From: Kudoa neothunni
Taxonomy: Eukaryota > Animalia > Cnidaria
Length of the DNA stretch: 64,000 nucleotides
Direction: 5' to 3'
Assembly: GCA_964304625.1 (NCBI GenBank)
Contig: OZ199838.1
Coordinates: 11,882,524 to 11,946,523 of the forward strand
Each line of letters starts with the position of its first letter. Position 1 is the first letter of the stretch. The notes under the pieces were generated by a model that was not told where the DNA came from, made no database searches, and was given only the letters and a program-made list of their open reading frames with translations. Positions 1,043 to 16,874 of this stretch are shown piece after piece. Made by a program: the position numbers and the translations under genes.

Positions 1043-3229
1043 ATGAGTTATAATAGAGAAATTTATTTTGTTGAAGCTGAAGATGAAAGTGTTAATGACG
1101 TATTATTTGAAGAAACAAAATCCGAAGATTTAGATGGAACCATAAATGAACTGGTCAATAATGAAGATGATTGTGATGTAAATGGCAGCGACTAAAATGT
1201 CGAAGATGCTTCAGAAATCTCCTATGTCGTGTCAGAGATGGAGAAAAGTAGTACAAAACTCCAACAAGAATTGAAAGGAGAGTAACACAGGAAAATACAT
1301 ACAAGGGGGCTGGGACCAGAATTTTCAAATTAAGCAAGACTTTTAGGGCAGACTCCATTGAGAGCATTTATTAATTTCTTGACCTCTTTTATACATGATA
1401 AGATCGTATATTGCACAAATATGTTCATCAAACTAGAAAAATCCAACATAAAGAAAATTGATTTGGAAAAATTCAACATTTATTTGGGTGAAGTCACACT
1501 TATTGGAGTGATGAAAGTGAAGAACGAGAATATTGGAAAGTTCTAGAGTAAAAAATACGGTCTATCATCCATAATAAAAAAGATATCCAGAAATCGCTTC
1601 GAAGAAATTACTACTTCTATTAGATTTAATGTTAGACGTAGTAGAAATCGTAATGACAAATTAGCTTCAATTAGACATAATTTTGACTGCTTCATAAAGA
1701 CATGCAGGGAAAGTTACAACCCATCCTCTCAGTTGACAGTTGATGACCAGTTTGTAACGTTTAGAGGACGATACTCCTTCAAAATTTTTATTCCATCAAA
1801 GCCTAGTAAGTATAGAATCAAAATCTGGGAGTTGTGGGATGCAACAAATGCCTATCTCTGCAATGCAAAAATTTACATTGGCAAGGAAAATGGAGTGGTT
1901 GAAAATAACCAAGGCGAAAGTGTAATGAAAGATCTAATGCAACCATACTTAAACAAAGGTCGAAATATAACTACAGATAATTTTTTTACCATTTTATCGT
2001 TTGCAAGGTACCTTATTTCAAATATGACTACTACTGTTGGAACAGTAAGAAAAATAAAAAATTTCTTGTTCCCGAATTCCAGTCACCAAAAGGTACTGAA
2101 AATGAAATAAAATTTCTTTTTCAGGACAAATATACTTCGGTGAAATTCAACCGGAAGAAAAACAAATCGGTAATTCTTTTAAGCTCTCAACATCGAAATG
2201 TTGAGATAAACATTGAGACCAAAAAGCCTGAAATTGCAATGTATTACAATTCAACCAAAGGTAGCGTCGATACTCTAGACCAGGGGTTCTCAACCGGGAG
2301 AAAATTTAAATGACAGGGGATAAATTAAATAACATCAAAATTAGATAGGGAGAATGTTTGCAATATGAGTTTGTGACGTACTTCCGGATTTTTAAGGAAT
2401 TATATTATTCAGGGCTATTAATCTCAATAAGAATTAGAAAAAAATTCTTTTAATATTTTTAGGAATAAGTTTTTAACAGTTATCTATAAAATTATTCTCA
2501 GTATCTTTGTTTTATGTCTCGTTTATGTATTTGTGGCGTAGCCTAATAATAATAATAATAATACTTAAAATGACTATTTTTAACTATTTCTAGTCCCTTG
2601 GAGCGATGGATTGGGAAAGAAGTAATTTTATTTAGCAAAATCTAAACAATAAAATCTGTATACAGTTTTTGAGTAAGAGTTGATGAAATTAAAAATTGTC
2701 ATTATGCAAACATACGCGCTTTTTAGTCCCAAAATTTACCCCTCAAATAGCGTCTGCTATAGCTAAACCAGTATAAAATCTTAAGGTAAATATAAAGTTG
2801 GCTTCCAAGTTAAGGGAAAAATTTGAAAAACGGTTGAAAACTCCAGCTCCAGACCGTATTTTCCGTTGGTATTCCATCAAGCGAGTTACTCGTCGTTGGC
2901 CGATGGCAACTTTTTTCAATATAATTGATATAGCTGCTTACAATTCTTATCTTTTGTGTATTAATAGAAGTCCTCAATTCCATGAAGCTAATAAAAAGCA
3001 TTCAAGATGAAAATTCTTAAAAACGCTTGCTGAATAGTTACTTGGTGATGACGACACTGCCAAATCATTCCAGACAAAAAACAGAATATTTTTCCTGAAG
3101 AGGCTTGTGACCCATTTGTTCTGTGAGTAAAAAGAAAAAAGTAGAATACCTTGTACAAAATGCCAACAGTATGTTTGTGAAAACCACCGAACTAATATTG
3201 TAGAATGTGGTACATGCCATTACAACTAA
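1043..3229 (+). mobile_element. Decayed piggyBac (PGBD) transposase, interrupted by a hAT MITE
   Basis: Fragments carry piggyBac motifs: TVDDQFVTFRGRYSFKIFIPSKPSKY, GRNITTDNFFT, and YNSTKGSVDTLD / YSIKRVTRRWPMATFFNIIDIAAYNS, which join once 2281-2854 is removed. The C-terminus is Cys-rich (CTKCQQYVCENH...C). Multiple stops and frameshifts; element ends not identified. Confidence 0.92.
2281..2846. mobile_element. Non-autonomous hAT (Buster/Charlie-type) MITE
   Basis: TIRs CAGGGGTTCTCAACCG (2281) and CGGTTGAAAACTCCAG (2831-2846) match 13/16. The 8-bp TSD is CTCTAGAC/CTCCAGAC, with the Buster nnnTAnnn core in the left copy. Confidence 0.88.
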
Positions 3230-3518: not shown

Positions 3519-6202
3519 TTAGTCACTGGCTCTAGTTGCTACAAAAGCCACTCCTCCAATAACCACAGCCAAAGCACCCAACACTGCGAGAATACTAAAA
3601 AAAGAATTATGAACTTTTTTACTATATTTCATATCAAATTACATCCTACCTCTAATTCTTCTTCATCCAACCACTATATATAAAAAATAAACAATTATAA
3701 TTAATAATTTATATAATAATTATTGTTACCCAGTTCCTTGTTCTATACAAAATTATATAACAATAAATAGATAACCTAATAATTTACTTCCAACTTCAAT
3801 CTCTTCAATAAGTGCTGCAGATTGTCCATCGCCAGATAACAACTGATAACTGTAATTTATATCTATATCCTCAAATACAACGGAGCTTGCACAATCAATA
3901 TCTTGATCAGTTGGTTTTCCTATTTTCTCAAATAAGAATTTATCCTCGGGATCTTTGGGATTGACGGCGTAGATAACCACATTACATAAATTCCCTGGCT
4001 GAGTTTTGTCTGGTATGATGGTTAATCTCCTTTCGTAACCATCAAAAATGATGTCTGGTTTTACTTTATCATTATTTTTTCCTAAAAATAAAGTTACAAT
4101 GCTTTCAAATCAAGATTTAATCACTTAGCAGTCGCGAAACTTGATAAACTGTGTAATCAATGTGGCCAGCATGAACCAACTCGATATTTATGGTTACATT
4201 CACTGGCAAATCCACCACTTCGAATCTGTGAGAACATAAACCCCAACATGGTTTTCCATCAGAACAGGTGGCTATTGTTTTTTTAAATCTTCTGGATCTC
4301 TTGTATCTCACGTAACATGTCATTTTTGGAAGATACGACTCATATTCATTCCCTGTTCCTGGGATCATGATCATTGTATCACCGAAAAAGAATGTTTGTG
4401 TCTCGCTGAATTGTATTGTTTCTAATCATACTAAGTATTTATAATATAATATATGTATACTTGTGGCGAAAAATGAATTAACAGTGTATATGCCTGGATC
4501 AGTTTTCGATGAGCCAATTATCATCTCAAGAATGTATGCTGTGTTGGGAGTCAAAAGCTTTAGCGGTATCTTATTGTCACATGCTTCAGGGCAAGCTTCA
4601 TTTCTCTCTTTCCCGCATATCGCAGTCATTGGTAAACCAGGTAGATTCGCGTGTACCAATGATGGAAAACACTTAGGTGAATTCTCAAGGTTTGATACTT
4701 GATAACTTGCTGAGGTTGTTGTGATATCAGATATAGCAACAGTATTTTTTGTATCTTTAAAATATCGTAATTTATAGTTTAGTTAAACTTATACCTTTAA
4801 TTTTATATTCTGCATATCCGTGTCTAGTTCCAATTTTGACAGTATAATCAGTAGTAAGAGCACTACTTTGCCCATCCGCGACCAATGTGGTGGCTCCACC
4901 ACAATACTTGAAACATTCGTCACCCTGACTACTTCCAGTCTGACTACATTTATCCTTAAATGTACTACTCGTTTTTATTTTGAAATTGCAGATCTCGTTG
5001 TTCATATAAGGATTATGAATTTGTAATGGGAAATTAGTTTTTTGATCAGCTGATTGAGAAACAGTGAATGGAACATATTTGTATTTGTTATCTTTATTGT
5101 AGAAAGACTTGTTAGCGTAAAACATGACTTTAGCTTGATTAGCACCACAGTAAGAATAATAGGCACTGGACATAGCGTAGCGAATTGGTATAGTAATGTT
5201 ATGTAGATTACAGCTGTTATTTTCTACTTTAGCCAAAGTTCTATCATGTTTTGTACTTTTAACTCGGCATTTATAGTTGTCAGTGCAGAAATTGTTAACT
5301 CCGAATTGCGCCTCTTCTTCACTTAATGTTACATTAGTTTCCGGAAGTCTTGGCATATCTATTAAAGAATAAGCTTAAAATTATAGGTAATACTATTATT
5401 TACCTGCTGGAATCGCTAATATATTAATTTTTCTTCCTTCAACAATTCTGAAATAATGTACCAATCGCCCACTATTGACATTAATCACAACTATCTGATT
5501 ACATTTCGTTTCGCATACAGGTACAGTGGTTTCTTCAGCGCTTGTTCCAGATATTTTGCATATAGTCTCATTAAATTTGGCTCTAACCCCATTTCTAAAT
5601 AAATGGTCTATTTTGCAATCCTCATTTTCGTCTCCTTTCAGATAAATTGTAACTTCATCCATGTATGTTGAGATTTCTTGATCAACTATAGGTATATCTT
5701 CTGGATTTGTTGTAGTTTCGGGAGGAGGGGTAATGGTAGTAGTTTCGGTAGTTTCAGTTGAAATGTCACTATTAGTTGGCATGGAATCTTCATTTTCAGA
5801 ATTATCATCGGTATCAGAATCATCATCACTAGAATTATCTTCAGCTTCAAGATTACCTCCAACCTCAGGAACACCATCAGCATCAAGACTACCTTCAGCA
5901 CCAGGATTAACACCAGCACTAGAACTATCACCTTCATCCTGATTAGTCGATCTCATAAATATTGGATGAATATCCGACTGTAAAAGCTGGCCACTTTCAG
6001 CAGCATCATTATTGGGTCTGGAGGCTTCTTCTGCAACTGGTTTTTCCACTACTGGTGGAGGTGGTGGCGGGCGTTTAATTTGCTTAATGAAATACTTGTG
6101 ACAACATACTAAATATGAATATCAGAATTAAAAATGGCAAAAAGTTAACAATTTACTAGTTGTAAGAGCTGTTAAAAATACAAACAATATTGAGAGCCTC
6201 AT
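3519..6202 (-). CDS. Multi-exon orphan secreted/type-I membrane surface protein
   Basis: ATG 6202 gives a signal-peptide-like MRLSILFVFLTALTT. It is followed by poly-Pro, an acidic tract, a Thr-rich tract (TETTETTTITPPPETTT) and Cys-containing domains in collinear ORFs 5396-6049, 4772-5356, 4426-4659, 4117-4374 and 3753-3980 separated by short introns. C-terminal hydrophobic ILAVLGALAVVIGGVAFVA, then TRASD* (stop 3519-3521). Internal exon limits are approximate. Confidence 0.75.
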
Positions 6203-8413
6203 TTAATTAATTCTTCGTTATTAATCATTCATCGGAGTTATTGAAGTCACTAAAATTACGTCGCCAATAAACGATAATAGTCTATAAGAATTAGTTAATT
6301 AATACTCATATTTAAGCCAAAATTTATTTTACTGTTAAGAATATGAAATTTATTTTTTAAATAATTATGGTGTAATAGTCATACAAAGAAATAAAACTCG
6401 AGCCCTAATAAACGTGTATGAGGATTAAAAATCATTGAATCTATTCAAAGTAATTAAAGTAAGACTATGGCATTCACATCCACATCTACAATTACATTCA
6501 TTGATTGAATAAACGCATAAAGCGGAATTTATCAATAATCCCTTTAAATAAATTGAATCGAAATGAATTTGGATTCACTAACACAATAAAATTCATCTAT
6601 TCCGGTTATGTTTTATTATAATAACGTTAAGAAATTTTTAATACCATAAATGTCAGTCTTTTTATAAGTATTTAACTGTTATGTACACAACGTATGTATC
6701 AAAATTTTAATCACATGTTTGTTTAATTTGATTTCTTATTCGGATACCTGAATATAAAACTCATAAAAATATGTTTTGGTTGTTGGAAACATTCTTTTTT
6801 CATTTCATTGAACTAATTTTCAATGTAGAAACTCATGATGATATTTCGTAACTTATGCTCTACTTACCGCGTAACAATATTCGGTTTCCACCATGCGTTA
6901 TCTCAAATACTCCTTTTCTTGTACCAAATGATTAATTCTGAACATTTTTGATATTTTAATTCTTTTGGAAATTTTGATTATGTATTAAAAATAAATATCC
7001 AGACTGGCGCATACTTTTCATCTTCACAGGGAATGGGAATATTTTGCATCAACAAATCTTTTAACAAACTAAAAAAATATTAATCCCGTTAATAAAATCA
7101 GATAGGATTAAACTATTTTTTTAATTATCATCTTTAACGTTTGTGATTTGCGAAGCTAAAATTCTGTTCATTTTAGACGGATCATAAATTAGCAAAAACT
7201 CCATAGTTAAATGAAAACACGACAATTTCTTTATTTCTCCAATAATATAACTTTATCCGACAAACTTTAACACACTCTTTTCTACAAACAGTTACATTAC
7301 CTCTTAATATCACCCTAAATAATTATTAATTAGATAAAATGAAATTATATCAATGTTGAATGTTATTGCTACAAATTTTATTTATGCGGCGCCTTTAATG
7401 AAATCTAAGGATACAACCCCAGTATTAAAGGCTTTAATCCATCTGACTATAACATACAATACCAACTAATCATTAATTAATCCAATCTAGATCTTGACGT
7501 ATTCAAAGCCACTAATGAACGTTACAAAGTGTACTTATCAAGTCTAATTTATTGCCTGCATAAGGCGTGTATTTGGTTACACACCCACGTTATATATGCA
7601 GATAGATGACATTTTTAAATTAACGGTTCTTTATTACATATTGGAGTGAATGTTAATTTAAACTGGCTGTCACTCTGAAATGGAAAGATTTTAATCTTAA
7701 GATGGAACTCCTGCAATCCGCTCAGTAAACTCAAACCCAACAAAATCACCATTTTCTAAATGCTACTCTAACTTTTTGGAGATTTGGAAACAAGATTTTT
7801 TAAAATATTTTAAACTACTAAAAATTTCATAAATATCTATCCATATAAAAAAATGTTGGCTACCTACACAAGCGTACCTGCTGACCCATACAAACATACG
7901 TACATTTTGCTTTTAACGTATAGTAGATAAACATATTCGAAATTATTAAAAGAGTGATGAAAAATGACGCAAATTTAACCTAATAATATTATTTTGTATG
8001 TAATATACTTTATCGAAAATGTAATATTTCAAACTCAAATTGATACTTTACACAAACACTACAAAAAAACCAACCTAATTTATCTCTATATTTACTCATA
8101 ATATATTTAAAAAATGTACTTCAATTAAATGTAAAAATGATGTTTATATATAATCTAGGGAGAATTAATCACTCTTAAAATAGTTGTTTAAATAATTATT
8201 ACTATTTTATACATACTGTTCATAGATTGTTAATAATAAGCTACTTATATAAATCAAGTTAAGAAAATGCATTGGAAAAGGATGGACATACTATCTAAAT
8301 GACAAATAGTAAATATTCCAATAGGCAATTACAGGAAACAAATATAGACATGCGTAAAAATACACGTTTTACATTATCCAATCAATATAGCAAATAATAC
8401 ATGATAAGTTTGA

Positions 8414-11400
8414 TCACATGTTTTGATTAGAATCCTTTTTGTTAGACGTGGGAGGCTGTCTTCCCGGGACAGAAGATTTTGTGGCGGAATAACTAACGAG
8501 AGGAGTAGTTCTACCAGTGGGACTATATGGGGTTTGATGGCAGGTAGCCGTGTAGACATGAGATTGTGGAGAATGTTGAGGTGAGACAGCAGCAGAGATA
8601 GTAGGGGTGTATGACAAATTCCCAGCAGTAGATCTGGCCGGCGAATAAGAAACAAGGTTATGACCTGGAGATTTGACGCTGGTGGGCGAATAAGCCATGG
8701 CTGTAGACAAAGGGGTGTACTTAGAATTGATGCCCGAACGACTTTGTTGATCACCATATAAATTGCCTGGGCTATATACGTAAGATGGTGACATATGCAA
8801 CGAACTTTTAATGTGAGCAGGTGATTCGGCACCACGATACGACATTGAGCCAGTAGGCATTCCATAGCTAAGAGGGCCGGCATTAGGTGATGTTGGAGTT
8901 TGTCTGGCTGGTGACAAATCCGAACTGCGAAGTGATCTAAGTTGTGAGGCCGACATACCTGAGCTTAAAGGAGAATGAGTCGGGCCACTTGACATGCCAG
9001 CGGGCGATCCAGTATATAAGCTGCTGACCGAATGCTGAGATGAGTTGGGACTTGGTACAAAGTTTTGATAGCCCGAGAAATTAGTCGAATAGTTTGATCC
9101 AACACTACTTCCACCACCCGAATATGGTGAAGTGGGTGACTGAGAAGCTAAGTTCGAGGACTGGTGCAGTTTGCCAGAGAACATACTGTTAGGGCTGGCG
9201 GAGTAGTTCAGAAGTGAGGAGCCTGGCGACATTCTACTGTATTGAGATGAGGAGTAACCGGTGGCCGGACTTGCTGAGATATCAGACATAGGAGAGAACT
9301 TGGAGACAGGTGTATTTGATCCCACAGCAGACATAAAATGGGCGCCAATCATACCAGGATTCATATAACTAGGTGCGTTCCTGTTGAATGGAGTTGTACC
9401 TTGTGGAGAGTGAATGGAAGGAGTGTGCATTGAACCCATAATAAGACCCGAGCTCAAACCAGACAAAGCAGAAAATCCACCAGAATCGACCTTGGTAGTA
9501 GGAATTTCGGTGGCATTTCTGCACATTTCAGGGTCGAGCATCAACGAAAAACAAGCTGTTCCAATAGGAGCAATTTTTCCTAACATCACATTTTCAGATA
9601 CACCATTCAAGTAGTCCACCTCGGAATGGAAGGAGGCATCAATTAAAACATCGACAGCCTCCTCAAAAGAACATCGCATCAACGCGCCCACTTCCTGTTT
9701 ATTGATACCATGTCTATTGATTGGCATGAGGTATCCTTTGGAGGTCATAATATCGCACATCAACGCCAAATGTCTGTAATTCACGTAAGATCCATCAAAA
9801 GAGATCACATGTTTAAGTTCTCGTTCAAGAACTTTACGTGTAGCTTCGATTCCAAGAACAGAAAAGATTTCACAGATATCATTGGAGGAGGTGCGACGGG
9901 GGTCGACATCAGGATCGCGTAATACATGTTCCAAACCATTACCATCAGTTTCAAGGATCCATTCTGAGATAGCCTCAATCTCCCCGGATTGATTGATAAT
10001 AATTTTTTTCTTATGGAGTTCGCTGGTGGGTTTATGCATGTAGACTTTTTTGATAGATGAGATACCTTGCAGAGGCATGTCATGAAGAATGTGTCCTTCG
10101 ATCAACCGTAAAAATAATTCACTATCAACATTTTTAGAGATTGCCTCTCTTCTATCACCATTAATACCACCCCCGATGGCACCAAAATTATCCTCGACAT
10201 CGTCTTCATCATCCTCATCTTCTTGATTTTTATCATTTCGATTGATAACACGTATTTGGATGACCAACGATTCAGAGTTATCATCACTATAGATAACGGA
10301 GATATCTTTTCCAAAGTGTCTAGAAATTCGTTCAGCGATACACTCAAGTGAGAGACGTTTGTCGATAGTTTTCTTTCGATCAAGTTCAATTCTAAGCACC
10401 CAAGGGGACACTGAAGAAACATCAAAATCGGGCATGCTTATGAAATCGTCAACAAAATGTTTATCTTGTACCAACGTGGTATTGTATATGTCAGGGTCAT
10501 AATGAATTGAGGAGTATAACGTGATATCGTAAAGTTTGGTGTGTTCCAATCGACATAAAACATCTTTTGCACGTTCTACATCGACTGCAGCCTGACCTTT
10601 CAAAAAAATAGTTAATGAAGGGGTTTTAGCAACCTTGGCCACATTCAGGATTTCCATTAAACGAGGAACACCAAGAGTGACATTTTTCGCAGAAACACCA
10701 GCATAATGGAAAGTGTTAAGTGTCATTTGAGTGGCAGGTTCACCAAGCGACTGAGCTGCAAGAGCTCCTACCATCTCTCCAGGATTTACTTGAGCAAAGT
10801 TGAATCTCGATTCGACCTCACCGATAACATACTCAAAAGCTTCTCGGTTGAGTTTATTTTCCATTTGAAGTTGTCTGCAGCACAGCATACTGCGAATGTA
10901 ACAAGAGAACAACATGATCGAATTGAGTTGGGCTTCTCTACTAATTAAATCATCCCCTTTGATAACCGTTAATCGATTTATCAAACTTTTAACTTCAGTG
11001 ATAATAACTTGGGGATGTAGATCGGAGGGTTTTCTAAAATCGACACCAAAAGTTTTTTGTGCATTCCATATGATACGTTTGATGTTGGCAGGTAGTGCAA
11101 CTCTTGTCTCACCAAATGGGAACAACTTTCTAAGAAAATCTCTGTCGTGTTGCAACTGCTCAAATTCATCTTCAATTTCTTGTATCAATTGACTATTTGT
11201 CATTATATCAATAACAATATCTTCATCGTAATGCTTTCTAAGTTTCTTCTCGTCCAAGATGTCGAAATGGAAACCTTTATAAAATTTAGCATCACTCTGT
11301 TTGATTGTGTTGAGGAATTGGAATTCGATAAACTCGCCGGACATGCCATCTTCACCATAACAAAACTGGACCATATAACGATTGGAGTTTCTCACAGTGC

Positions 11401-14400
11401 CATCATAATGAACCATAACACTTTCCATAGCTTTTACCAAACGACGTTGAATGTAACCTGTTTCTGATGTTTTCACTGCAGTATCAATGACACCTTCTCT
11501 ACCTCCCATGGCATGGAAGAAAAATTCGGATGGTGTCAATCCACTCAAATAAGAATTCTCAACAAATCCACGACTCTCCGGGCCGTAATCATCTTTGATG
11601 AAATGAGGTAGAGTTCGATGTCTGAAACCGAATGGAATTCGTTTTCCTTCAACATTTTGCTGACCAACCACAGCAATCACTTGAGATATGTTGATTTTTG
11701 AACCTTTGGAGCCAGCAACAACCATAATTTTAAAGTTGTTGGAATCGTTGAGAGATCTTTGAGCGTAACTACCAGTCTTGTCACGACAGCTATTAAGAAT
11801 ACGATTGACTTCATTCTCGAATGTTTGTCTGAGTGAATTTCCGGGAGTGGGTTTCAATTCGTTGTAATGAGCCTTTTTAATAACTTGCATCACCTCATCT
11901 TTGGCTTCGAGTATGTTTTGTTGGATTTGTTGATAGGTATCAGAATCGGCAATACAATCACCAATACCAATACTATGACACTCGGTCATTAACCAATTGT
12001 TTGTTAATCGTTGAACCCGGCTGAAAAAAGCTTTTGTCACATCAGGGCCTAATTCAATAGCAATGATATGGATAAGTGAACCAGACGACGTGCCCATGGT
12101 CTTTTTACATAAAACTCCACTCAAATGGACACCATTTTCAATGAGAACACGAGTGTCACCAGGTGACAGCCATTTGAGAATAGGATCTGAATCCTCGCTG
12201 TCCGGATGAGCGCTGTGGGTGCTAGTGAGATTTACCGAAGGAGGAACAATCAACGAAAAAAGTTGTTTGCCAGTCCATAAAGGTTTAGGTTTGAGAATAG
12301 CGGGATTAGGAATTTTACCATCCCAATTGTCTATCCACATGAGCAAGTTCATCAACTCAGACATCTCAATGAAAACGTCCCGACGAGTCATTTTGTAGAT
12401 AGCAGTGAGAGCATCCTGTACGATTCCCATACACGGCCTGTTGGCTTGGGGCGTTATGACCATTTTGGGAACCATTGCCAACTCTTGCAGTTCAGCTTTA
12501 GCCTCCAATGACTGTGGTACGTGCATATTCATTTCATCACCATCGAAATCTGCATTATAAGGCGTTGTCACACTGAGATTGAGTCTGAAAGTCGACCACG
12601 GCAACACTTTCACACGGTGGCCCATCATGGACATTTTGTGAAGACTTGGTTGTCGATTGAATATTACAATATCATTATCGACCAAATGTCGTTCAACTTT
12701 ACAACCAAATTGCAATTTTATATCGGAAAGATTGTTCAGAAAGCGCAAATCAATACGATCACCATTTTCTCTGACAATATATTTGGCGCCGGGATACTGA
12801 AGTGGGCCCCTTGCCACAAACATTTGCAATCGTTCAATATTCAATGGTGTCACCAGCTCGGGCACTGTCAAATTCATAGCTATAGATTTTGGTGTACCAA
12901 CTTGATCGATGTCAAGATTGGGGTCAGGGGTGATAACGGTACGGGCGGAAAAATCCACTCGTTTACCCATCAGATTGCCCCGAATTCTACCCTCTTTTCC
13001 CTTGATACGTTGTTTGATAGCTTTGAGGGGTCGACCAGATTTTTGGATGGCTCTCGGAAGACCCGGATTTTCGTTGTCAAATAATGTAGCCACATGATAT
13101 TGCAGCATTTTCCAATCTTCCATCAGAATGTGAGCTGCTGCTCCGTTGGTTTCATTGGTTTTGAGCTGGTTATTGGTACGAACAATGTCAGCCAGTTTAT
13201 GGGTGAGATCATCTTGGCTTCTCATAGTGCCAGTAGAAATGATAACTGGTCTCACACAGATAGGTGGGACAGGAAGCACACTTATGATTAACCATTCCGG
13301 ACGCCCCTAAACGTACCAAATTAACATATATTTTGATTCCATTAAAAGATTAGGATTAATGAAATTTAAAAAATACTTAATGGCACAGCAAATAAATCAA
13401 TAAAATAGAAACTATGAAATAAATGAATATATAAATAGTGCGGTTTCTATGGTGAAATTGCAGACATAGAATAAAGGTACATGCCCATCATGGGTATCAC
13501 TTAAAATAACTAAAATTTTCCTGAGGAAATAAGTATACTTAATCTTCTAAAACGAGCATTGTAATTAACTTTAATAGATTTGGATTCTGATTTAGCAGCT
13601 AAATAAAAGTCAGCTCTTCCACCAATGAGCGATTAAATGACATTACTCCTAACTGAATTCTATGTCTTAGCCCTAGTATTCCTCTTCCGCACCTATAAGG
13701 ATATTCACATTGACCCTACACATTTAATCATAATACCGTTAAGGCGTGTTTAGCTAGTATTTTATAAGAAAACAGCTATTGTTAATGATCATAATATTCG
13801 AGTCGGATTAGACAAACATACCAATCTCAATAAGTTAAACGCTTAAGCCAGCTATAAACAGAAGTTGTTATTATCTAAAATGGTGATTACACGAAGGTCG
13901 TATATTCATTAATTTATTCAAATTTCTCCGCAACAATAACCACCGTTATTTTTTACCCTAGCATCCACATCTATACAATGAATGCACAATTTATATTTAG
14001 AATCTGATACGGTTAATTATTTAGGACTCTTAAAGGAGTAACAGAAGGGTCAAAAACAATAAACTATTTTTAAAACTATACATAATGGATTAAATTTGTA
14101 TGGGCAAATAAACATTCCAATAATAAATACAATGCAGCCTGCCACTGCAGCTCCAAAACATGTTAACTGTTACCATAACATTATCAACAATGGAAGAATT
14201 ATATGTTTATGACTGTTTCGAAAAAACTCCATCACAGTAATTAGTCAATAGTTCACAAGATCATTATACGTAGTATTCATAGTTAATATTAAATGATACG
14301 ACGTTTGGTCATTTTATGAATATAAAATCTTCAAAAAATTCTTAAAATGAATTAAGAAAATACTACTCGACGTCACATAATTAATCGACAGTAGGTCATT

Positions 14401-16874
14401 ACTCCGGTTGATTCGTTTAATTTTAATTCTCGTTAAACGAAAATTGGGTAAACATAAAAGAAGACATACACAAATTTCGAAGCTTAAAATAATTAAATAT
14501 TACTCCAGCATGCATTTCAAGGGAGTAAAAACAGCTTTCACAAAACATCAAAAATATTCATAATTGTCAAGTAAGTAAAATTTTAAATTTCCGAAATTCC
14601 TTGGGACTAAAAGTAGAGAAAAAGCTGGGAAAGTTACCAATTGATTTTGTCAAAAAATCGTTATAATTTCTGTGAAATATTAATCCAAACGAGCGAACTA
14701 TTTAGGTAAAAAATTTGCTCGATCGAATCTAGGATGGTTCCGAGGTCGTAAAAGTAAATCACACCTAGAAAGAATATGAAATACTTATAGCCTGCAGACA
14801 CTCGAAAAGACAGAACCAATGAATGGTTCACTCGACTTACAAAGTCAAGAAAACTTCACTCTAACTTAACACAGCAAATAATTAAGGTGAGGTCGCCTAA
14901 TTTTATAAGCAAAGCCAAGAAAAATATTAATTCTCTGAATACATTATCTTCTTCAGGTGAAACTATGCTTAACACTTAACTACTACTAAAATACATCGAA
15001 GCAAGCGAAAATTTGACAAGCCGAATAAAATATAATGTAAAACAGGAGATTCAAACAACGAAAATAAACACAAGTCAACGAAAACCTGTCAAAATAAGGC
15101 ATCTTAGCTATACATAAAGTATTAAAATTCACCAATGTTCATAAGAATCGTGTGACAATAAATTGATTAAAGTAGAGAGTTTCTTGAGATATTTATCCAA
15201 AGATAATCAGTTCAATCAAAATGGAAATAAATTATAAAGTTTAAAAAAATTGGCAGCTTCTTACTTCTACGAGTGACTTAATAAATACACCATTTTAAAT
15301 ATATTCATGTGTAAAACAAACAGAATTTGGGAGCAATCAAGCTTTAAAAAATAAACAAAGAAAAAAATATTCTCACTATAAAACCATTCGTTGTATTTAA
15401 CTCAATTTTTGTAGGTTGAGATATAATACAAACAAACATTGGAAAATTCATTTCACTTGGATAATCTCAAAAACACATTTATATTAAAAAAGTAATCCTA
15501 TCATCTGTATGGATTCAAAAAAGGACTATAAAAAGTTATATTCGCGCGCCGGTTAATTACCAATTATTTAATATCTACTATATAATTTTCGTTCGTATTC
15601 ATATTTAGCTCTTCTTCGGGTGTTAAAAATCCGTTATGAAACAAACGCCTTAACATACCAAGCATTGAAATAACTTCTTAACGCAACTTCTCATCCAATT
15701 GAGAGTAACTGTATAGAAATATGGTAATGAAAAAAACTATGAGCACGCCTCACACATAGTATAATTTAATTGTGATTTTATGGATAAAAAATGTATTCAC
15801 ACTTAGATACATAGATTTTTAGATACTTTGATGACTACTAATTACACCTACATCTTACTGTGCCAACAGTTTCAATGAAGACATTATTAATTAATGATGA
15901 GCTGAAATTGTTACATGTTTAGGGTCGATTCCTAGAAATCGACAATCATCGTCTGATATAAACCGAAGTATTTCCATCGCACGTTCCGGAGTGAGAATTG
16001 TTTTTTTGTCGGCATTATCGGTACCGCTGATAGCTGCCTCCTTAGCTTTTTTACTATTTTCAGGTTCAATAAAAAATTCCAGTCCCACTCTTTTAATTTT
16101 TGGTTGATATCTACCACATCCACTTGCACTCTTCAAAATCAACCAATAACACAATCAACAACTGACACACGCAAGTAACAATATTACAGTCATGGTTTCA
16201 TCATTTTCGTCTCCATCGTAGTCTTGTAGTGTTGCACAACATCGTTTATTCTTACACAAATCATACACCGCATTAAAAACCGCTGCTGGATTTTTGGTTT
16301 TACGATTGAGAGAAACCAGTGTGGGATGATTCTACAACACACACACAAAAATCACCTCAGTCATCAGTCGACCGATTAAACTACTTTATCAACCAACAGC
16401 TTTGAACAGTAGAAACACACACATCGGAGGAGTTTGGCCAAGGTTGCCATGTAGTTGATATGATAGACCGGCCTGGCCAATTCGATATGACCAAAATGAC
16501 CAGGACAGGTCGAGAGTGTACCACCACATGTCAAACATTTCATATTTTTTTCGCTCGGTCCCTGCCTAGGATCGAGCAACCCATTCACTTTTGGATGACC
16601 CCCCTCCATCGTCTCAGGATAAATGATACCACCTTCTGTGGTGGACATTGCCTTCTAAACACAACATATTTAGCTTAATCAATGTGGGAATAGATTAACA
16701 AGTTTAAAGCGCCCGGTTAAAGTTTAACATCACCAACTGTTATGATACAACCAAACTCAATATTCTACCAGCAATACAATTATATATGAAACTAACAATG
16801 GTTTCTGGGCTTAGAATCCCAAAGTGAATTCTTTTTATCTTCCTTAATGGCGCATCAACCTCCGGTTTGTTCAT
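8414..16874 (-). CDS. POLR2A: DNA-directed RNA polymerase II largest subunit (RPB1)
   Basis: Exons 16874-16797, 16654-16385, 16331-16188, 16130-15915 and 13306-8414, all GT-AG and in frame (about 1866 aa). Motifs: [12 protein letters not shown]...[32 protein letters not shown], catalytic [37 protein letters not shown]. Ser/Pro/Tyr-rich C-terminal tail. Confidence 0.98.

What the first reader, a model, noticed from the sequence alone, without database searches (positions are those of the whole stretch)
8414..9440. Animal-like RPB1 whose CTD has lost the heptad register entirely
Seen: an intact RPB1 core is followed by about 340 aa rich in Ser/Pro/Thr/Tyr without a single YSPTSPS. The closest matches are QSPTSPY, QTPTSPN and YSPTSVK. 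In the distal part, Y-[ST]-P motifs recur at irregular spacings of roughly 9-19 aa, in a loose (N/P)L(V)SY[ST][PA] context (NLVSYSP, NLSYTP, PLVSYSA), and rarely have the Ser5-Pro6 pair. Established: animal and fungal CTDs normally consist of tandem heptads whose Ser2/Ser5 phosphorylation recruits capping, splicing and 3'-end factors. Inference: this intron-rich genome couples transcription and processing through a rewritten, composition-based CTD, and its CTD kinases and readers may have co-diverged.
Basis: partly seen in the sequence, partly recalled or inferred. Interest (0 to 1): 0.8.

Follow-up and report, generated by a model that had tools for sequence, protein, structure and literature searches.

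The report
Myxozoan RNA polymerase II tail without heptads
The main RNA polymerase II subunit of this parasitic jellyfish relative (a myxozoan) has a real, expressed and strongly conserved tail that has lost the seven-residue repeat found in nearly all animals, and other myxozoans share this state, so a whole animal group seems to run transcription without the classical repeat.

Summary
The minus-strand gene is a five-exon RPB1 of 1866 aa whose last exon is 13306-8414. After an intact core comes a 372-aa Ser/Pro/Thr/Tyr-rich tail with no YSPTSPS, no Y[ST]Px[ST]P and no 7-residue periodicity.

It is not an artefact. The 40-Mb assembly has one RPB1 locus and no heptad-coding sequence. A spliced transcript contig from a different study runs through the whole tail to the same stop codon.

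The tail is under strong purifying selection: 22 synonymous against 3 non-synonymous differences, omega about 0.04. It keeps 2.4-fold enriched [ST]P and about 8-fold enriched Y[ST]P motifs.

The core groups with Myxozoa inside Cnidaria, and four myxobolid RPB1s also lack heptad arrays. The loss therefore probably predates the Kudoa-myxobolid split.

CDK9, CDK12/13, MAT1, the capping enzyme and the Spt6 SH2 domain are present. CID domains, Ssu72, the Set2 SRI domain and FCP1 were not detected, but these searches had no eukaryotic positive control.

Heptad-less tails are known in many protists, and one animal case (Schistosoma mansoni, PMC3646058) is published. I found no paper describing this for Myxozoa. 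Verdict: a new member of a known kind, of moderate to high interest. Earlier notes of this scan gave only the organism's name.

The parts
16797..16874 (-). RPB1 exon 1 (start codon, MNKPEVD...SPETI)
   Evidence: GT donor, phase 0, homology to cnidarian N-termini. The length sum of exons 1-4 (708 nt) plus 27 nt matches the 735 nt of transcript contig X4 lying beyond 13306.
16385..16654 (-). RPB1 exon 2 (KAMSTTEGG...KLLVDK; zinc-binding clamp region)
   Evidence: AG/GT borders, phase 0.
16188..16331 (-). RPB1 exon 3
   Evidence: AG/GT borders, phase 0.
15915..16130 (-). RPB1 exon 4 ([10 protein letters not shown]...GIDPKH)
   Evidence: AG/GT borders. The loose end of contig X4 at 13306 reads, in reverse complement, the codons for [10 protein letters not shown]. 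This proves the exon 4-exon 5 splice.
13307..15914 (-). Intron 4 (2608 nt)
   Evidence: Skipped by the spliced contig of run X4 and present in the DNA contig of run X1.
9533..13306 (-). Exon 5, core part: end of Rpb1 domain 1 and domains 2-7, up to the conserved ...[10 protein letters not shown] core end
   Evidence: Pfam domains at E 1e-35 to 1e-98. 65-68% identity to myxozoan and hydrozoan RPB1.
8417..9532 (-). Heptad-less C-terminal tail, 372 aa. The finding's 8414-9440 is its last 341 aa plus the stop codon.
   Evidence: no heptads, no periodicity, enriched [ST]P and Y[ST]P. Omega 0.04 against the organism B transcript.
8483..8776 (-). Distal cluster of eight Y[ST][PA] motifs at spacings of 9-19 aa
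   Evidence: tail residues 222-319.
8414..8416 (-). Stop codon TGA
8376..8413 (-). 3' UTR, at least 38 nt covered by the transcript contig
   Evidence: Contig X4 starts at 8376. The poly(A) site was not determined.

Best explanation
[quoted passage not shown] Its C-terminal domain descends from a canonical cnidarian heptad array but has lost the repeat register completely. It now exists as a unique-sequence, presumably disordered tail rich in Ser, Pro, Thr and Tyr.

Shown here: the tail is transcribed and spliced as one piece with the core. It is the only Pol II tail in the genome. It is held by strong purifying selection. It keeps a significant excess of Ser/Thr-Pro and Tyr-Ser/Thr-Pro motifs. 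Myxobolid myxozoans have the same kind of tail, so the loss probably predates the split between the Kudoa and Myxobolus lineages.

Inferred: the tail still works as a landing pad that is phosphorylated at its roughly 29 proline-directed Ser/Thr sites by the retained CTD kinases (the CDK7 module, CDK9, CDK12/13). Factors that need only a phospho-Ser-Pro with or without a nearby Tyr, or that use the linker or Spt5, such as the capping enzyme and the Spt6 tandem SH2, would still be served.

Readers and erasers that depend on heptad geometry (CID proteins, Ssu72, Set2 SRI, FCP1) may have been lost or changed beyond recognition. That last point remains open.
For: Identity: Rpb1 domains 1-7 are present. 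Pol II-specific domain 6 is found at this locus only, and domain 5 occurs at this locus plus two other polymerase-like loci. In the tree the window groups with four myxobolids at SH-aLRT 100, and that clade is sister to hydrozoans at 98.

Real 3' end: PF05001 gives 0 hits genome-wide at E<=10. A degenerate YSPTSPS DNA pattern gives 2 hits against 2 in the control, and the only one that could encode YSPTSP lies in a stop-rich frame. The DNA contig X1 spans the whole stretch with no substitutions, only one 1-nt gap at 8109 in non-coding sequence. The spliced 5663-nt contig X4, from another organism label and study, covers 8376-13306 and then joins exon 4.

Selection: of 25 tail differences, 22 are synonymous and 3 are not. 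Omega is 0.044 (95% CI 0.008-0.146), P=3e-11 against neutrality, and the tail has no indels.

Motifs: [ST]P is enriched 2.4-fold and Y[ST]P about 8-fold over shuffles, in this tail and in three of the four myxobolid tails; Y[ST]P is not significant in the truncated P0004 tail. All of them have 0 YSPTSPS and at most 1 loose heptad, against 19 and 45 in Hydractinia. Myxobolid tails align with each other at 42-59% identity.

Machinery: CDK9 (best PDB hit CDK9, 185 bits); CDK12/13 in two copies; MAT1 (32 bits); capping guanylyltransferase (72.7 bits, best PDB hit mouse Mce1); Spt6 SH2 (224 bits).
Against: No phosphorylation, binding or functional data exist, so the mechanism is inferred.

CDK7 itself was not identified among 42 kinase loci.

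The Kudoa tail has no statistically significant similarity to myxobolid tails (BLASTP E 0.55-20). A common heptad-less ancestor therefore rests on parsimony, and independent decay is not excluded.

The selection estimate rests on 25 substitutions from a single comparison, and only the first 40 of 133 differences were listed.

The non-detections of CID, Ssu72, SRI and FCP1 come from six-frame HMM searches without a eukaryotic positive control. The same NIF search also missed TIM50, which suggests limited sensitivity.
Confidence: 0.65

Rival explanations
1. The tail is a relic spacer. The CTD phospho-code has been abandoned, and the tail is kept only for a composition-dependent role such as solubility, nuclear import, condensate formation or polymerase stability. 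It would not be a regulated kinase substrate or a factor-docking site.
For: There is no heptad register and no Ser2/Ser5 unit. CID, Ssu72, SRI and FCP1 were not detected. The tail is not alignable between Kudoa and myxobolids.
Against: A purely compositional role does not predict omega 0.04 at the residue level. It also does not predict the specific 2.4-fold excess of [ST]P and 8-fold excess of Y[ST]P over composition-matched shuffles in five myxozoan tails. The dedicated CTD kinases CDK9 and CDK12/13 are retained.
Confidence: 0.15
2. All the usual CTD readers and erasers are in fact present, and my negatives are false. The tail is then read by an essentially normal animal machinery that tolerates scattered degenerate motifs, and the partners have not changed with it.
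For: The searches had no eukaryotic positive control, the genes are split by introns, and the proteins are very divergent. The NIF search found only a CTDNEP1-like gene and missed the expected TIM50. Every factor that was found looks conventional.
Against: Ssu72 is normally well conserved and 189 positions long, yet it gave no candidate at all at E<=0.1. Spt6 SH2 (224 bits) and the capping enzyme (73 bits) were found easily by the same method. Known structures of CID and Ssu72 complexes use contacts within one heptad turn (Ser2-Pro3-Thr4-Ser5, Ser5-Pro6 with Tyr1), which this tail never offers; this last point is established knowledge and was not tested here.
Confidence: 0.3
3. The finding is an assembly or annotation artefact, or an alternative canonical CTD exon or paralogue exists elsewhere.
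For: None found. The only RNA evidence is one assembled contig from a run labelled 'DNA?'.
Against: Two independent data sets agree on the sequence, and the X4 contig is spliced at intron 4 and ends 38 nt after the stop codon. The genome has no PF05001 hit, no YSPTSPS pattern above control and no second Rpb1 domain 6. No ORF of 60 aa or more lies between 6049 and 8374 on either strand.
Confidence: 0.03

Closest known systems
RPB1 of myxobolid myxozoans: Henneguya salminicola (P0001), Thelohanellus kitauei (P0005) and two unnamed Logan assemblies (P0004, P0094)
   Same: Same clade in the tree. All have 0 YSPTSPS, no lag-7 periodicity, tails of similar length (about 330-360 aa), and the same excess of [ST]P and Y[ST]P.
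   Different: Myxobolids keep one recognisable double heptad (YFSPTSPTYSP) and a conserved NYSPTCPTFLASPKHSPASP block, and this tail has neither. Tail-to-tail similarity with this window is not significant, and core identity is only 65-68%.
Non-repetitive C-terminal extension of Schistosoma mansoni Rpb1 (PMC3646058)
   Same: A parasitic animal whose Rpb1 tail is reported to have no repeat structure and lowered Ser/Pro content. That paper raises the same question of whether CTD-binding proteins were lost.
   Different: It is a different phylum (Platyhelminthes) and so an independent event. I did not examine the Schistosoma sequence here. The paper gives no clade-wide pattern, selection estimate or machinery survey for that case.
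Non-canonical, heptad-less CTDs of protists such as trypanosomatids, ciliates, Giardia and Trichomonas (Stiller and Hall 2002, cited in PMC4362643; own knowledge)
   Same: A Ser/Pro-rich, non-repetitive tail on an otherwise normal RPB1. In trypanosomes such a tail is known to be essential and phosphorylated (own knowledge, not tested here).
   Different: Those lineages lie outside the group of eukaryotes in which canonical heptads are strongly conserved. Here the loss occurred inside Metazoa, whose ancestor is inferred to have had about 44 heptads (PMC4362643).
Canonical cnidarian CTD (Hydractinia symbiolongicarpus, P0002)
   Same: The nearest free-living relatives in the tree, with 67% core identity.
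   Different: Hydractinia has 19 exact and 45 loose heptads and lag-7 autocorrelation of 0.76-0.83, against 0 heptads and about 0 here. Pro content is 23.6% there and 10.8% here.

Membership tests
RNA polymerase II largest subunit (RPB1) | Rpb1 domains 1-5, shared by all multisubunit polymerases | tested here: met
   PF04997, PF00623, PF04983, PF05000 and PF04998 at E 2e-41 to 8e-99.
RNA polymerase II largest subunit (RPB1) | Pol II-specific domains 6 and 7 (funnel/foot/cleft) | tested here: met
   PF04992 at 1e-58 and PF04990 at 1e-35. Domain 6 occurs only at this locus in the genome.
RNA polymerase II largest subunit (RPB1) | Orthology with animal RPB1 | tested here: met
   Best hits are all animal RPB1 at 62-67% identity. 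The tree places it with Myxozoa inside Cnidaria.
Canonical CTD (tandem YSPTSPS heptads, Pfam PF05001) | Tandem heptads matching Y-S-P-T-S-P-S or close variants | tested here: not met
   0 exact and 0 Y[ST]Px[ST]P. No PF05001 hit at E<=1 in the tail or at E<=10 in the genome.
Canonical CTD (tandem YSPTSPS heptads, Pfam PF05001) | Seven-residue periodicity of Tyr and Pro | tested here: not met
   Lag-7 autocorrelation is -0.01 for Tyr and -0.07 for Pro, against 0.83 and 0.76 in Hydractinia. One of 19 Tyr gaps equals 7.
Canonical CTD (tandem YSPTSPS heptads, Pfam PF05001) | Position after the core and linker; Ser/Pro/Thr/Tyr-rich | tested here: met
   372 aa directly after the core end motif, with S+P+T+Y at 47.7%.
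Non-canonical (heptad-less) Pol II C-terminal extensions | Ser/Pro-rich tail without repeat structure on a bona fide RPB1 | tested here: met
Non-canonical (heptad-less) Pol II C-terminal extensions | Tail is phosphorylated and required for transcription | not testable with these tools
   Only indirect support: 29 proline-directed sites, retained CDK9 and CDK12/13, omega 0.04.

The most novel reading that the evidence does not exclude
Myxozoa as a clade have dismantled the heptad-based CTD code. The repeat register was lost before the Kudoa-Myxobolus split, and the heptad-geometry readers and erasers (Ssu72, CID-domain termination factors such as PCF11/SCAF/RPRD, the Set2 SRI domain, FCP1) went with it. 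Transcription, capping and 3'-end formation in these animals would then run on a unique-sequence, CDK9/CDK12-phosphorylated Ser-Pro scaffold together with the Rpb1 linker, Spt6 and Spt5. That would be the first animal group known to lack both the code and most of its readers.
Probability: 0.3. Interest if true: 0.75.

Novelty: new member of a known kind. Interest (0 to 1): 0.55.

Why it matters
Tandem heptads are treated as a near-invariant of animal gene expression, because the phosphorylation pattern on them times capping, splicing, termination and chromatin marking. A whole animal clade that keeps a strongly constrained tail without any heptad would be a natural experiment on which CTD functions are indispensable in an animal cell. 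It would add to the list of extreme reductions already known in Myxozoa.

The finding gives concrete, testable predictions: which Ser/Thr-Pro sites are phosphorylated, and whether Ssu72, CID, SRI and FCP1 are really gone. It also has a practical consequence: standard anti-CTD phospho-antibodies and heptad-based assays are unlikely to work in these fish parasites.

Tried and rejected
1. Paralogue or alternative heptad exon: rejected.

2. Relatives of the tail. A word-index search restricted to the tail scored 7760 candidates and none reached E<=0.01. A search with the C-terminal 628 aa as a stand-alone query matched only the core part, at no more than 60% identity apart from three short 26-27%-coverage fish hits at 68-70%. 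No close Kudoa relative is therefore in that database.

3. Positional homology between the Kudoa and myxobolid tails. MAFFT lines up some motifs (RQxPTSP, SHVY..., YSPT), but composition-adjusted BLASTP is not significant. I do not claim it.

4. RNA raw-read runs X11 and X12 matched only a 34-nt low-complexity acidic stretch (10189-10222), with loose ends on both sides. They contain no reads of this gene and say nothing about expression. The joint 8066->10196 in X1 is a 21-nt-sided low-complexity artefact.

5. Capping-enzyme CTD-docking residues (CDS1 R330/K331/R386 and the others listed in PMC8034621). The first GTase exon aligns to mouse Mce1 only up to F329. The next candidate exons are too short to align: their best hits are chance or absent. 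The result is inconclusive, so no claim of a changed docking site is made.

6. CDK7 was not recognised by motif among 42 kinase loci; only its partner MAT1 was found.

7. The large representative-protein search, structure prediction and complex prediction were not run, because no claim here rests on them.

8. The exons were joined only inside a local script, to check frame and length.
Full report
**What is there.** The finding's coordinates lie at the 3' end of a long minus-strand ORF, 8414-13279. Its translation carries Rpb1 domains 1-7 at E-values of 1e-35 to 1e-98. The last 341 aa match no Pfam family, including the CTD repeat model PF05001. Upstream lie four small exons. All borders are GT-AG in phase 0, giving a CDS of 5598 nt, or 1866 aa, without internal stops. 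The exons are 16874-16797, 16654-16385, 16331-16188, 16130-15915 and 13306-8417, with the stop codon at 8414-8416. I joined the exons only inside a local script to check frame and length.

**Check of the observation.** I took the tail as the 372 aa that follow the conserved core end (...[10 protein letters not shown]).
- It contains no YSPTSPS and no Y[ST]Px[ST]P. It has six Y[ST]P and 29 [ST]P.
- Its composition is S 23.7%, P 10.8%, T 7.8% and Y 5.4%.
- Only one of 19 Tyr-Tyr gaps equals 7.
The distal Y[ST][PA] spacings are 19, 9, 15, 12, 19, 9 and 12.
- Lag-7 autocorrelation is -0.07 for Pro and -0.01 for Tyr, against 0.76 and 0.83 in the hydrozoan Hydractinia.
- The DNA has no tandem repeat and only one trivial 16-nt direct repeat.
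- The remaining motifs are not chance. Against 20,000 residue shuffles, [ST]P is 29 against 12.2 (P<5e-5) and Y[ST]P is 6 against 0.73 (P=5e-5).

**Is it the real and only tail?** The assembly has 40.26 Mb in 4 contigs.
- A six-frame search with PF05001 finds nothing at E<=10.
- A degenerate DNA pattern for YSPTSPS finds 2 places against 2 for the reversed control. The only one that could encode YSPTSP lies in a stop-rich frame.
- Pol II-specific Rpb1 domain 6 occurs only at this locus. Domain 5 occurs here and at two other loci that lack domain 6, presumably Pol I and Pol III; I did not characterise them further.
- No ORF of 60 aa or more lies between the stop codon and the next gene.

Public runs add two independent views. 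A 12,280-nt contig of run X1 spans the laid stretch, intron and downstream DNA included, with no substitutions. It is probably the source sample. A 5663-nt contig of run X4 comes from a different organism label and study. It covers 8376-13306 with 130 substitutions. Its next letters, in reverse complement, are the codons for [10 protein letters not shown], the end of exon 4 about 2.6 kb away. That contig is therefore a spliced transcript. Its 735 nt beyond 13306 equal exons 1-4 (708 nt) plus 27 nt of leader. It runs through the whole tail without a joint or indel and ends 38 nt after the stop codon.

The two metatranscriptome runs X11 and X12 touched only a 34-nt acidic low-complexity stretch and are uninformative.

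**Selection.** The listed differences between the window and the X4 transcript cover the whole tail. There are 25, of which 22 are synonymous and 3 are not (Q>H, V>A, G>S). By the Nei-Gojobori method dS is 0.094 and dN is 0.0039, so omega is about 0.04. The exact interval is 0.008-0.146, and the probability of so few replacements under neutrality is 3e-11. The adjacent 154 core codons show 15 synonymous and 0 non-synonymous changes. The heptad-less tail is thus constrained almost as tightly as the enzyme core over this short distance. The caveat is that this is one pairwise comparison with 25 events.

**Whose gene is it?** The best database hits for the core are Henneguya salminicola, an unnamed Logan assembly, Thelohanellus kitauei and Hydractinia, all at 65-67% identity. 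A maximum-likelihood tree of 18 animal cores (1204 columns, LG+C20+F+G4) groups the window with four myxobolid sequences at SH-aLRT 100. This clade is sister to the hydrozoans at SH-aLRT 98. Earlier notes of this scan call the genome Kudoa. I confirmed only that it is a myxozoan outside the myxobolid group. No closer relative is in the protein database.

**The lineage shares the state.** The four myxobolid RPB1s have 0 YSPTSPS, at most one loose heptad and no lag-7 signal. Hydractinia has 19 exact and 45 loose heptads, and Trichoplax has 17 and 27. The myxobolid tails show the same enrichment of [ST]P and Y[ST]P. They align with each other at 42-59% identity where their cores are 75-85% identical. 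P0094 is a complete ORF on a 5.4-kb Logan contig. P0004's tail continues beyond a stop or mini-intron with the same conserved block.

The Kudoa tail is not significantly similar to the myxobolid tails (BLASTP E 0.55-20) or to a canonical CTD (E 0.08). By parsimony the register was lost before the two lineages split. Since then the sequence has turned over at depth while being tightly held in the short term. Independent loss in the two lineages cannot be excluded.

**Machinery.** I searched the genome in six frames with Pfam models and classified hits against PDB sequences.

Present:
- CDK9 (best PDB hit CDK9 at 185 bits, next CDK12 at 130 bits).
- CDK12/13, in two copies about 14 kb apart.
- A CDK11-like and a CDK1/2-like kinase, recognised by motif.
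- MAT1, the CDK7 assembly factor (32 bits, over the cut-off).
- The capping guanylyltransferase (72.7 bits; best PDB hit mouse Mce1).
- The Spt6 tandem SH2 domain (224 bits, in a 1466-aa open frame).

Not detected:
- The CID domain (no candidate).
- Ssu72 (no candidate).
- The Set2 SRI domain (18 bits, below the cut-off).
- FCP1 and SCP. The only NIF-family gene is CTDNEP1-like (best PDB hit 8ujl).
- CDK7 itself was not recognised among 42 kinase loci.

These negatives are weak. The tool's control genomes are prokaryotes, the genes are split by introns, and the NIF search also failed to find TIM50. The easy detection of Spt6 and the capping enzyme shows the method can work here, and this makes the complete blank for the usually well-conserved Ssu72 the most suggestive negative.

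An attempt to test the capping enzyme's CTD-docking residues (listed in PMC8034621) was inconclusive.

**How it most likely works.** Shown: this is a genuine, expressed, single-copy tail under selection, with an excess of proline-directed Ser/Thr sites and Tyr-Ser/Thr-Pro triplets but no heptad unit. Inferred: it is still a CDK-phosphorylated docking surface. It would serve factors that need only a phospho-Ser-Pro with or without a nearby Tyr, or that use the Rpb1 linker or Spt5. Readers that depend on heptad geometry would have been lost or remodelled. The main rivals are a purely compositional relic tail and a normal set of readers that my searches missed.

**Comparison with what is known.** Loss of CTD repeat structure is known in many protists. 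It has been reported once in an animal, Schistosoma mansoni (PMC3646058). The metazoan ancestor is otherwise inferred to have had about 44 heptads, and the cnidarians examined so far are canonical (PMC4362643). Full-text searches found no paper that combines Myxozoa with RNA polymerase II and either 'heptad' or 'C-terminal domain'. The library does not cover subscription journals.

I therefore file this as a new member of a known kind: a further, clade-wide animal case. What it adds is the selection estimate and a first look at the machinery.

Noticed in passing
window 1733-2107 (+): A fragment of a piggyBac-type transposase (PF13843 DDE_Tnp_1_7, 75 bits, profile positions 128-250 of 349). It is only a partial ORF, so probably a decayed copy.
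   Followed up: partly
G000:C1:4856704-4857201 and 4870800-4871297 (L023, L022): The CDK12/13-like kinase gene occurs twice about 14 kb apart. The two copies have identical scores, identical motif strings and the same exon layout in the stretches examined, so this looks like a recent segmental duplication.
   Followed up: partly
G000:C3:3899716-3900127 (L007/L008): The only clear NIF/FCP-family phosphatase in the genome is CTDNEP1 (Dullard)-like. No TIM50, FCP1 or SCP was seen. These are either real losses in a reduced parasite or a sign that the six-frame search lacks sensitivity.
   Followed up: partly
window 10206: A 3-nt length difference between this genome and the organism B transcript, inside the acidic Glu/Asp run of the RPB1 core. 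It is the only indel in 4.9 kb of coding sequence.
   Followed up: no
P0001 (Henneguya salminicola HZS_2317): The public gene model is a chimera. The RPB1 tail runs on into domains of a Glu/Pro-tRNA synthetase-like protein (PF00749, PF03950, PF00587, PF03129, PF09180). Automated CTD surveys would therefore misread it.
   Followed up: no
L058:5161-5550 (Logan ERR9890981 contig): The P0004 myxobolid RPB1 ORF is cut by a stop after ...TYSPVCYLDY. It continues in frame with ...NYSPTCPTFLASPKHSPASP, which is most likely a very short intron inside the tail.
   Followed up: partly
window 4772-6049 (-): Two adjacent ORFs without Pfam hits lie downstream of RPB1. One is Cys-rich (194 aa). The other is 217 aa with an acidic Ser/Asp/Glu-rich stretch and a Thr/Pro-rich stretch. 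Their function is unknown.
   Followed up: partly
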